NCBI RefSeq assembly: GCF_006345805.1
Contig: NW_021825219.1
Span: 1 to 15,837 of the forward strand
Origin: Octopus sinensis
Lineage: Eukaryota
DNA length: 15,837 bases
Reading direction: 5' to 3'
The notes under the pieces are model-generated. The model was given only the letters and a program-made list of their open reading frames with translations. It did no database searches and had not been told where the DNA came from. Position numbers and translations under genes: made by a program. Below are positions 9,386-9,570 of the stretch, in pieces (the stretch's first letter is position 1; each line of letters starts with the position of its first letter).

Positions 9386-9489
9386 GTTTACGGCCATATC
9401 ACGTTGAATATTCTCGTTCTCGTCAAAGATTAGTGAAGTTAAACAACGGTGTACCTATTTAGTACTTAGAATGGACGGCATCTTTGAAT
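9386..9489 (+). pseudogene. 5S rRNA-derived sequence (about nt 1-100 of 5S, degenerate, lacks the 5S 3' end)
   Basis: Collinear blocks matching the metazoan 5S consensus as I recall it: GTTTACGGCCATATCACGTTGAA (9386-9408), GTTCTCGTC (9416-9424), GAAGTTAAACAACG (9435-9448, box A region) and TTAGTACTT (9459-9467). Box C is decayed and there is no oligo-T terminator, so this is not a functional 5S gene. Confidence 0.85.
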
Positions 9490-9570
9490 CAACTTCGATG
9501 GGGGTGCTCCAGAATGGCCAGAATGGCCAAATGCTTCAGACAGAAACAAGGAAGGAAGATAAAATAAATA
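9386..9570 (+). mobile_element. Candidate 5S-headed SINE (SINE3-type) or chimeric retrocopy carrying the family-B 3' tail
   Basis: After the 5S part come GGTGCTCCAGAATGGCC (9503-9519) and GAAACAAG (9543-9550). These match the reverse complement of the SINE B tail at 444-460 (GGTGCTTCAGCATGGCC) and 422-429 (GAAACAAG). An A-rich end follows (AAAATAAATA). There is an internal 9-bp tandem duplication AGAATGGCC. Confidence 0.6.

What the first reader, a model, noticed from the sequence alone, without database searches (positions are those of the whole stretch)
9386..9570. 5S rRNA head fused to the 3' tail of a tRNA-SINE: candidate SINE3-type family in an octopus-like genome
Seen: about 100 nt collinear with 5S rRNA joined to the same 3' tail that ends the three family-B SINEs in this window, then an A-rich end. 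Established: 5S-derived SINEs (SINE3) are much rarer than tRNA-derived ones (described in zebrafish; AmnSINE1 also has a 5S head), use the type 1 Pol III promoter, and SINE 3' tails are typically borrowed from the partner LINE. Inference: either a member of a 5S-headed family mobilised by the same LINE as family B, or a one-off template-switch chimera. I do not know of a described cephalopod SINE3 but cannot check. No TSD was visible.
Basis: partly seen in the sequence, partly recalled or inferred. Interest (0 to 1): 0.75.

Follow-up and report, generated by a model that had tools for sequence, protein, structure and literature searches.

The report
Decayed 5S-headed SINE-like retrocopy in octopus
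A single, badly eroded retrocopy in octopus DNA joins the front ~100 bases of 5S ribosomal RNA to the tail of a common octopus SINE. This is the layout of the rare 5S-derived SINEs, but I could not test whether it belongs to a repeated family or is a one-off accident.

Summary
Window 9386-~9490 is collinear with 5S rRNA from its first nucleotide. It scores 28.4 bits against RF00001, below the gathering score of 38, with E=5e-4 locally and 0.024 for the whole window. A shuffle test gave 78 against 17±2.6. Positions 9494-9569 match the last ~70 nt of the "family B" SINE tail (score 56 against 22±3.5 in shuffles). Family B is an OK/OR2-type tRNA-Core SINE that also occurs in Octopus vulgaris and O. 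sinensis.

The copy is a fossil. The head shows 21 GC→AT changes against 1 AT→GC. The promoter boxes are degraded, no target-site duplication is detectable, and there is a private 9-bp duplication.

The key question, family or one-off template-switch chimera, stayed untested because no tool gave genome-wide octopus DNA. There was no second copy in ~48 kb of scanned octopus loci. A published RepeatMasker table held about 100 octopus SINE hits and none with a 5S label. The papers I read list no molluscan 5S SINE.

I favour a low-to-moderate-copy 5S-headed SINE (about 0.5) over a single chimera (about 0.33). This is a modest finding: at best a new member of a known kind.

The parts
9386..9481 (+). 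5S rRNA-derived head, covering 5S nt 1 to about 97. It is 72% identical to an invertebrate-type 5S sequence and has decayed to the genomic GC content.
   Evidence: RF00001 hit at 28.4 bits. Alignments and shuffle test.
9437..9451 (+). Remnant of box A of the type 1 Pol III promoter (5S nt 50-64): AGTTAAACAACGGTG, 12 of 15 positions kept.
   Evidence: Box positions are from established knowledge of the Xenopus 5S internal control region.
9454..9459 (+). Remnant of the intermediate element (5S nt 67-72): CCTATT, 3-4 of 6 positions kept.
9467..9484 (+). Remnant of box C (5S nt 80-97), 9-11 of 18 positions kept with an indel. It is preceded by a perfectly kept TAGTACT (9460-9466).
9482..9493 (+). 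Junction zone, CTTTGAATCAAC. It fits both 5S (CCTGGGAATACC) and family B (CTTCGACTAAAA), so the exact crossover cannot be placed.
9494..9569 (+). Tail homologous to the last ~70 nt of the family-B (OK/OR2-type tRNA-Core) SINE: TTCGATGGGGGTGCTCCAGAATGGCC...GACAGAAACAAGG...
9511..9528 (+). Private 9-bp tandem duplication, AGAATGGCC x2, inside the tail. None of the five family-B copies has it.
9552..9569 (+). Purine/A-rich 3' end (AAGGAAGATAAAATAAAT), matching the AAGTAAAAGA...-type end of family B.
395..575 (-). Family-B SINE 3' half, copy B1. It serves as a comparator for the tail.
10640..10800 (-). Family-B SINE 3' half, copy B2. It serves as a comparator for the tail.
15660..15837 (-). Family-B SINE 3' half, copy B3, cut off by the window end. 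It serves as a comparator for the tail.

Best explanation
The element is a dead, roughly 185-bp retroposed copy of a composite Pol III-type retroelement.

SHOWN. The first ~97-106 nt of 5S rRNA, starting at +1, are fused to the last ~75-90 nt of the octopus OK/OR2-type tRNA-Core SINE tail.

INFERRED. I think it most likely belongs to a low-to-moderate-copy 5S-headed SINE, that is, a SINE3-type element. [quoted passage not shown] Its RNA would have been recognised through the borrowed SINE tail by the same, still unidentified, LINE reverse transcriptase that moves family B, and inserted by target-primed reverse transcription.

After insertion this copy decayed neutrally. That decay accounts for the strong AT-biased substitution, the eroded promoter boxes, the lost TSDs and the 9-bp slippage duplication. 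It has no present function.
For: Head and tail homologies are both far beyond chance.

The head starts exactly at 5S nt 1 and spans the whole internal control region at nt 50-97. That is what a Pol III-driven master needs.

Head and tail abut with no intervening sequence. There is no 5S remainder downstream and no family-B body upstream.

The tail belongs to a SINE that has demonstrably spread in this genome. There are three copies in the window and copies in O. vulgaris and O. sinensis, so the retroposition machinery for this tail existed.

Substitutions in the head run 21 GC->AT against 1 AT->GC, and head GC equals window GC at 37.3%. Head divergence (28%) and tail divergence (18%) are compatible with one insertion age.

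Inference from sampling: if the 16-kb window was drawn without regard to this feature, meeting a copy is much more likely when thousands exist than when it is one of a handful of sporadic chimeras.

5S-headed SINEs have arisen independently several times, in fish, mammals, reptiles and insects (PMC10946416; PMC10886601).
Against: Only one copy has been seen. About 48 kb of scanned octopus loci hold family A and B copies but no 5S-like head.

The held part of a published RepeatMasker table for the O. vulgaris transcriptome has 89 tRNA-Core SINE lines. It has no '5S rRNA', SINE3, 5S-Deu, 5S-Core or AmnSINE1 line. By the rule of three, 5S-headed copies are therefore fewer than about 3% of OK/OR2 copies, if RepeatMasker would detect them.

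The promoter boxes of this copy are degraded, so nothing shows that a master was ever active. No TSD is visible. No partner LINE was identified.

The sampling argument assumes the window was chosen at random, which I cannot verify.
Confidence: 0.5

Rival explanations
1. It is a one-off chimeric retrocopy. A LINE reverse transcriptase that had primed on a family-B SINE RNA copied about 80 nt of its tail. It then switched template to a 5S rRNA molecule and copied that to its 5' end. The product inserted once and never founded a family.
For: The structure is what template switching predicts: a 5'-truncated retroelement tail at the 3' side and a small RNA copied to its exact 5' end at the 5' side.

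The two parents share short similarity at the junction. 5S has ...GAATACCGGGTGCT and family B has ...AAATTCAAGGCGGTGCT, which could have guided the switch.

Head and tail divergence are compatible with both parts having been pristine at one insertion time.

No second copy was found in any data I could reach. Template switching to small RNAs, 5S included, is the published model for such chimeras (PMC4824008; PMC4758252).
Against: Described chimeras usually carry the small RNA through to its 3' end. Here the last ~15-25 nt of 5S are missing.

Sporadic chimeras should be very rare per genome, so meeting one in a random 16-kb window is unlikely a priori.

A chimera that keeps nt 1-97 of 5S, the full internal promoter, together with a LINE-recognised tail would itself be a competent SINE founder. 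The line between this rival and the best explanation is therefore only copy number.
Confidence: 0.33
2. It is two unrelated events that happen to adjoin. Either an old 5S pseudogene fragment had a 5'-truncated family-B SINE land beside or inside it, or a deletion, recombination or assembly join brought the two pieces together.
For: Family-B copies are dense here, three in 16 kb. The region is full of microsatellites prone to rearrangement. No TSD delimits the whole unit.
Against: Head and tail share the same strand and the correct order, and they abut within a 12-nt zone.

The missing 3' part of 5S is not found downstream of the tail. The local score is 13, and 349 of 1000 shuffles reach it.

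No TSD flanks the tail alone. 5S pseudogenes are expected to be rare where LINEs recognise specific tails, which is general knowledge about stringent-type LINEs.
Confidence: 0.07
3. It is a functional or recently functional variant 5S rRNA gene.
For: It shows full-length collinearity with the RF00001 model in the cmscan alignment.
Against: The score is 28.4, below the gathering score of 38. Several helix pairs are non-canonical and 18 model positions are collapsed to 1.

The 3' strand of helix I is replaced by SINE tail. GC has dropped from the roughly 55-60% of a 5S gene to 37%. It is a single copy, not in a tandem array.
Confidence: 0.01

Closest known systems
SINE3 of zebrafish (Kapitonov & Jurka 2003) and the lepidopteran SINE3 families (HaSE3, PxSE4/5, CsSE2 and others)
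   Same: It has a 5S rRNA-derived head starting at +1 that spans box A, the intermediate element and box C. This is followed by a non-5S 3' part used for LINE-dependent retroposition.
   Different: Those are demonstrated multi-copy families with consensus sequences and, for zebrafish, a CR1-like tail. Here there is one eroded copy. The 3' part is the tail of an octopus tRNA-Core SINE, there is no separate body, and copy number is unknown. No molluscan SINE3 is mentioned in the papers read.
5S-headed DeuSINEs (AmnSINE1, OS-SINE1, LmeSINE1; RepeatMasker class SINE/5S-Deu-L2)
   Same: They are composite elements in which a 5S promoter was grafted onto an existing tRNA-SINE lineage, presumably by template switching, and took over promoter function (PMC4824008, PMC4758252).
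   Different: Those retain part of the tRNA head and a long Deu central domain. This element has no tRNA-like part (ARAGORN found none), no Deu domain and no CORE domain. It has only the terminal ~75 nt of the donor SINE.
Octopus OK / OR2 SINEs (Ohshima & Okada 1994; RepeatMasker class SINE/tRNA-Core)
   Same: It shares the last ~70 nt (GGTGCTCCAGCATGGCC...GACTGAAACAAG...A-rich end) at 82% identity to a five-copy consensus. It is therefore presumably served by the same LINE partner.
   Different: The head is 5S-derived, not tRNA-derived. The CORE domain and the internal (TA/TG)n stretch of the full element are absent. I could not tell which Repbase name, OK or OR2, corresponds to family B.
Chimeric retrogenes formed by RT template switching to small RNAs (U6-, U3-, 5S-L1 chimeras; Buzdin et al. 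2003)
   Same: It is a bipartite retrocopy, with a small Pol III RNA at the 5' side and a 5'-truncated retroelement at the 3' side, in the same orientation and fused directly.
   Different: Those are single-copy, L1-made, usually keep the small RNA's own 3' end and show TSDs. Here the 5S 3' end is missing, the acceptor tail belongs to a tail-specific SINE, and no TSD survives.
Cassandra (plants) and Ajax (nemerteans) TRIMs
   Same: They are mobile elements that captured a 5S promoter.
   Different: In those the 5S segment sits inside the LTRs of non-autonomous LTR retrotransposons. Nothing LTR-like flanks this element.

Membership tests
SINE3 / 5S rRNA-derived SINE | 5' head homologous to 5S rRNA, beginning at 5S nucleotide 1 | tested here: met
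   RF00001 at 9386-9490 scores 28.4 bits with E=5.4e-4. This is below the gathering score of 38, as expected for a decayed partial copy. The alignment starts at nt 1 and scores 78 against 17±2.6 in shuffles.
SINE3 / 5S rRNA-derived SINE | Internal type 1 Pol III promoter present (box A, intermediate element, box C) | tested here: inconclusive
   All three regions are covered by the head, but they are eroded in this copy. Box A keeps 12 of 15 positions, the intermediate element 3-4 of 6, and box C 9-11 of 18 with an indel. This says nothing about a master copy.
SINE3 / 5S rRNA-derived SINE | Many dispersed copies sharing the same head-body/tail junction | tested here: inconclusive
   There is no other copy in the window or in the O. 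vulgaris, O. bimaculoides and O. sinensis rhodopsin loci. The held RepeatMasker table has no 5S-class line among about 100 SINE lines. A genome-wide search was not possible because the searchable collections lack octopus DNA.
SINE3 / 5S rRNA-derived SINE | 3' tail shared with a partner LINE | not testable with these tools
   The tail is shared with a SINE, family B. No octopus LINE 3' end was available for comparison.
SINE3 / 5S rRNA-derived SINE | Target-site duplications flanking the insertion | tested here: not met
   No direct repeat of 8 nt or more ends at 9385. The only matches are AT-rich low-complexity strings 9-35 nt upstream. At ~20-30% decay, this loss is expected.
5S rRNA gene (Rfam RF00001) | Score at or above the curated gathering threshold, with helix I and the 3' end intact | tested here: not met
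   The score is 28.4 against 38. Some pairs are non-canonical and 18 model positions are collapsed. The 3' ~15-25 nt are replaced by SINE tail.
CORE-SINE / tRNA-Core SINE (OK, OR2) | tRNA-derived head and CORE central domain | tested here: not met
   ARAGORN finds no tRNA. The alignment to the family-B consensus covers only its last ~70 nt. The CORE-like parts seen in full copies are absent.
Template-switch chimeric retrogene (Buzdin type) | Small RNA carried through to its own 3' end, fused to a 5'-truncated retroelement | tested here: not met
   The retroelement part is 5'-truncated, which meets that half of the feature. The 5S part lacks its last ~15-25 nt.
Template-switch chimeric retrogene (Buzdin type) | Unique junction, i.e. 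single copy in the genome | not testable with these tools
   This needs a whole-genome search of an Octopus assembly.

The most novel reading that the evidence does not exclude
Octopus genomes carry a true SINE3-type family, with a 5S rRNA head grafted directly onto the terminal ~75 nt of the OK/OR2 tRNA-Core SINE tail. None is mentioned for molluscs in the papers I read. It would be an independent birth of a 5S-promoter SINE by head replacement on an already successful SINE tail.
Probability: 0.5. Interest if true: 0.45.

Novelty: new member of a known kind. Interest (0 to 1): 0.3.

Why it matters
5S-derived SINEs are a small minority of SINE families. A 2024 review lists them only for reptiles, insects, fish and mammals (PMC10946416).

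If this copy belongs to a family, it would extend the class to cephalopods, whose genomes are unusually SINE-rich. It would be a clean example of modular SINE evolution, with a new Pol III promoter swapped onto an existing LINE-recognised tail. It would also define the minimal tail, about 75 nt, that the octopus partner LINE needs, and it could serve as a presence/absence marker among octopods.

If it is a single chimera, it is an ordinary by-product of reverse-transcriptase template switching. Its only value is as an illustration of how such SINEs are born. Either way, this particular copy is an inert fossil.

Tried and rejected
1. PATTERN SCAN FOR THE JUNCTION. I scanned JGI metagenome contigs for TAGTACTT N{30,60} GGTGCTCCAGCATGG. 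The single hit is in a GC-rich bacterial contig with no 5S signal, so it is chance.

2. SINE MOTIFS IN OTHER COLLECTIONS. The family-B tail 19-mer in IMG/VR gave one chance hit. A family-A 31-mer in GTDB genomes gave none. These collections hold no octopus DNA.

3. PROTEIN-LEVEL TRICK.
   - The 59-aa open frame across the junction (9408-9584) found nothing in the word-indexed search.
   - In the full HMMER scan of 1.84 billion representatives it found only a chance match to a repetitive 2102-aa protein.
   - A family-A SINE ORF also found nothing, so the protein collection does not seem to hold non-coding ORFs from octopus.
   - Copies this diverged would share few words anyway, so these negatives are uninformative.

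4. FETCHING OCTOPUS DNA THROUGH A REAL GENE. Octopus rhodopsin gave three orthologous 24-kb loci, L003-L005. No neighbouring genes were available to walk from, and there were no TE ORFs. A fourth locus, L006, proved to be from a squid, 94% identical to Loligo rhodopsin and without family A or B SINEs.

5. WINDOW ORFS. The ten longest window ORFs are not in the protein collection.

6. LITERATURE. No cephalopod 5S SINE appears in the papers found. The tail motif is not printed in any held paper. The Albertin 2015 paper is not held.

7. TRANSCRIPTOME SUPPLEMENT. I text-searched a 400-kb O. vulgaris transcriptome FASTA supplement for 5S and SINE motifs. There were no hits even for the abundant SINEs. 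The file is wrapped at 60 nt per line and the copies are diverged, so this is not a valid test.

8. REJECTED IDEAS.
   - A functional 5S gene.
   - Family B inserted into a 5S pseudogene, because there is no 5S remainder downstream.
   - A candidate TSD, TATAGAT..., because it lies 13 nt away from the 5' end in low-complexity DNA.

Full report
WHAT IS THERE

Window 9386-9569 (+) reads GTTTACGGCCATATCACGTTGAATATTCTCGTTCTCGTCAAAGATTAGTGAAGTTAAACAACGGTGTACCTATTTAGTACTTAGAATGGACGGCATCTTTGAATCAAC|TTCGATGGGGGTGCTCCAGAATGGCCAGAATGGCCAAATGCTTCAGACAGAAACAAGGAAGGAAGATAAAATAAAT. It sits between an (AT)n microsatellite and AT-rich unique DNA. The window holds no tRNA gene and no Rfam family at the gathering threshold.

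THE HEAD

With E-value reporting, cmscan places RF00001 (5S rRNA) at 9386-9490, covering model positions 1-120, at 28.4 bits. The gathering score is 38. E=5.4e-4 for the 351-nt search and 0.024 for the whole window, both strands. Every other sub-threshold hit in the window is a microsatellite matching AT/GT-rich miRNA models.

It is collinear from 5S nucleotide 1. It fits the invertebrate type best (CACGTTGAA, GTTCTCGTC, GAAGTTAAGCAACG). The local score is 78, against 17.1±2.6 in 1000 dinucleotide shuffles with a maximum of 28. No other 215-nt segment of the window exceeds 22.

Over 5S nt 1-97, 70 of 97 positions are kept:
- box A: 12 of 15
- intermediate element: 3-4 of 6
- TAGTACT just before box C: 7 of 7
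- box C: 9-11 of 18, with an indel

The substitutions are strongly one-directional, 21 GC→AT against 1 AT→GC. Head GC (37.3%) equals window GC (37.3%). That is the signature of long neutral decay, not of a working gene.

THE TAIL

GGTGCTCCAGCATGGCC occurs four times with at most 3 mismatches, where 0.01 hits are expected. One occurrence is in the element and three are in minus-strand family-B copies. I built a consensus from the three window copies and two O. vulgaris copies. Against it, 9490-9570 aligns to the last ~70 nt with score 56, where shuffles gave 21.8±3.5 with a maximum of 39. Identity is 82% over 68 aligned columns, with five gap blocks. The family-B copies themselves are 83-89% identical to the consensus.

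One of the gaps is a private 9-bp tandem duplication, AGAATGGCC x2 at 9511-9528.

From 9494 onward (TTCGATGGGGGTGC...) only family B explains the sequence. Up to 9481 only 5S does. The stretch 9482-9493 (CTTTGAATCAAC) fits both. The two parents resemble each other here, with 5S ...GAATACCGGGTGCT and family B ...AAATTCAAGGCGGTGCT.

WHAT FAMILY B IS, AND WHERE THE WINDOW COMES FROM

I fetched the rhodopsin loci of O. vulgaris (L003), O. bimaculoides (L004) and O. sinensis (L005). Both window SINE families occur in them. Family A matches at 84-92% identity.

Full family-B elements in L003 have a CORE-like 5' part (..CACCTTGGGCAAGTGTCTTCTACTATAGCCTCGG..), an internal (TA/TG)n stretch, and then the 3' half seen in the window. 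A published RepeatMasker table for the O. vulgaris transcriptome names the octopus SINEs OK and OR2, class SINE/tRNA-Core (PMC9115989 supplement). Family B is therefore an OK/OR2-type CORE-SINE. The 5S element carries only its terminal ~75 nt, with no tRNA part and no CORE domain.

ARE THE TWO PARTS ONE UNIT?

They share strand and order and they abut directly. The missing 3' end of 5S is not found downstream. The best local score is 13, which 349 of 1000 shuffles reach. No family-B body lies upstream. A family-B insertion into a pre-existing 5S pseudogene is therefore unsupported.

No TSD ends at 9385. This is unsurprising at 20-30% decay in low-complexity flanks.

Head divergence is 27 of 97 and tail divergence is 12 of 68. 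Given the CpG-rich head and the approximate 5S reference, these are compatible with a single insertion age.

FAMILY OR ONE-OFF?

This is the decisive question, and I could not answer it.

- The searchable DNA collections contain no octopus sequence. A junction pattern and SINE motifs returned only chance hits or nothing.
- Translating the open frame across the junction and searching the protein collections found nothing real. A control with an abundant SINE-A ORF also found nothing, so these negatives carry no weight.
- The only octopus DNA obtainable was the three orthologous 24-kb rhodopsin loci. They have no 5S-like head by BLASTN or by Rfam.
- The held 400 kb of the RepeatMasker table has 89 tRNA-Core lines. 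It has no '5S rRNA', SINE3, 5S-Deu, 5S-Core, 5S-RTE or AmnSINE1 line. By the rule of three, 5S-headed copies are below about 3% of OK/OR2 copies, provided RepeatMasker would flag such decayed heads. Other hits of 50-130 nt at 26-31% divergence in that table pass its threshold, so it probably would. That still allows thousands of copies.

WEIGHING THE TWO READINGS

Both readings predict the same anatomy: a head starting at +1, a 5'-truncated tail and a direct fusion.

Two points favour a family, both by inference. First, a retrocopy that keeps 5S nt 1-97, the whole type 1 promoter, plus a tail that the local LINE machinery demonstrably uses is exactly a competent SINE. Second, meeting such a copy in one 16-kb window is far more probable if thousands exist than if it is one of a few sporadic chimeras. 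This second point assumes the window was not chosen for this feature.

Two points favour a one-off. No second copy was seen anywhere, and the microhomology at the junction suits a single template switch.

I put a 5S-headed SINE family at about 0.5, a single chimera at about 0.33, two independent events or a rearrangement at about 0.07, and a working 5S gene at about 0.01. The remainder is unassigned.

COMPARISON WITH WHAT IS KNOWN

The layout matches SINE3 of zebrafish and Lepidoptera. It also recalls the 5S-headed DeuSINEs, which are thought to have arisen by grafting 5S onto a tRNA-SINE through template switching (PMC4824008, PMC4758252). It differs in having no body or central domain and in reusing an octopus CORE-SINE tail.

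SINEBase, two molluscan SINE surveys, Kojima 2024 and a 2024 review do not list a molluscan 5S SINE. [quoted passage not shown] Repbase and Dfam could not be consulted, so 'undescribed' is not established.

VERDICT

The element is an inert fossil. At best it is a new member of a known kind, and its interest is modest (0.3).

Noticed in passing
window 14799-15549 (related dispersed copies at 126-306, 10161-10341, 12119-12299): There is a tandem array with a 184-bp period, 4.1 copies and 92% matches. Its unit is an internal piece of the tRNA-Core 'family A' SINE, so this is a SINE-derived minisatellite.
   Followed up: partly
window 10936-11592: An element of about 630-660 bp has 193-nt terminal inverted repeats that are 98% complementary (arms 10936-11128 and 11400-11592). 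The non-AT part of the arms begins TAGAGGGCATTATACATACATGCC..., and TA-rich DNA lies on both sides. It looks like a young MITE-like non-autonomous DNA transposon.
   Followed up: partly
window 13244-13313 and 13599-13668: A 70-nt inverted repeat, 99% complementary, has its arms 285 nt apart and lies next to long (TA)n tracts.
   Followed up: no
window 2260-2660, 7110-7340, 9295-9360, 9725-9830, 10530-10650, 11795-11876, 12810-13135; also L003 and L004: Microsatellites of (TA)n, (TG)n, (TATG)n and (CTAT)n give dozens of sub-threshold Rfam hits to miRNA families such as mir-297, mir-1277, mir-3149 and mir-466. These are composition artefacts.
   Followed up: yes
L003 19380-19745 (+) and 20155-20520 (-); L005 19564-19755 and 20153-20363: Two full OK/OR2-type SINE copies lie in inverted orientation about 400 bp apart, downstream of the O. 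vulgaris rhodopsin gene. Each has a CORE-like 5' part, an internal (TA/TG)n stretch and the family-B 3' half. O. sinensis has matching copies, one at 98% identity. Neither was detected in the O. bimaculoides locus, which has N gaps.
   Followed up: partly
window 3620-4310 and 5220-5800: Long imperfect trinucleotide tracts (CAC/CAT/ACC-type and the complementary GTA/GTG-type) produce spurious low-complexity ORFs of 150-220 aa on both strands.
   Followed up: no
L006 (ENA ERZ21867824, contig ctg122970l, 450 kb): A record the tool files under ENA metagenome assemblies carries exon 2 of a squid rhodopsin, 94% identical to Loligo forbesi. It has none of the octopus SINE families, so it is host (decapodiform) DNA in that assembly.
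   Followed up: partly
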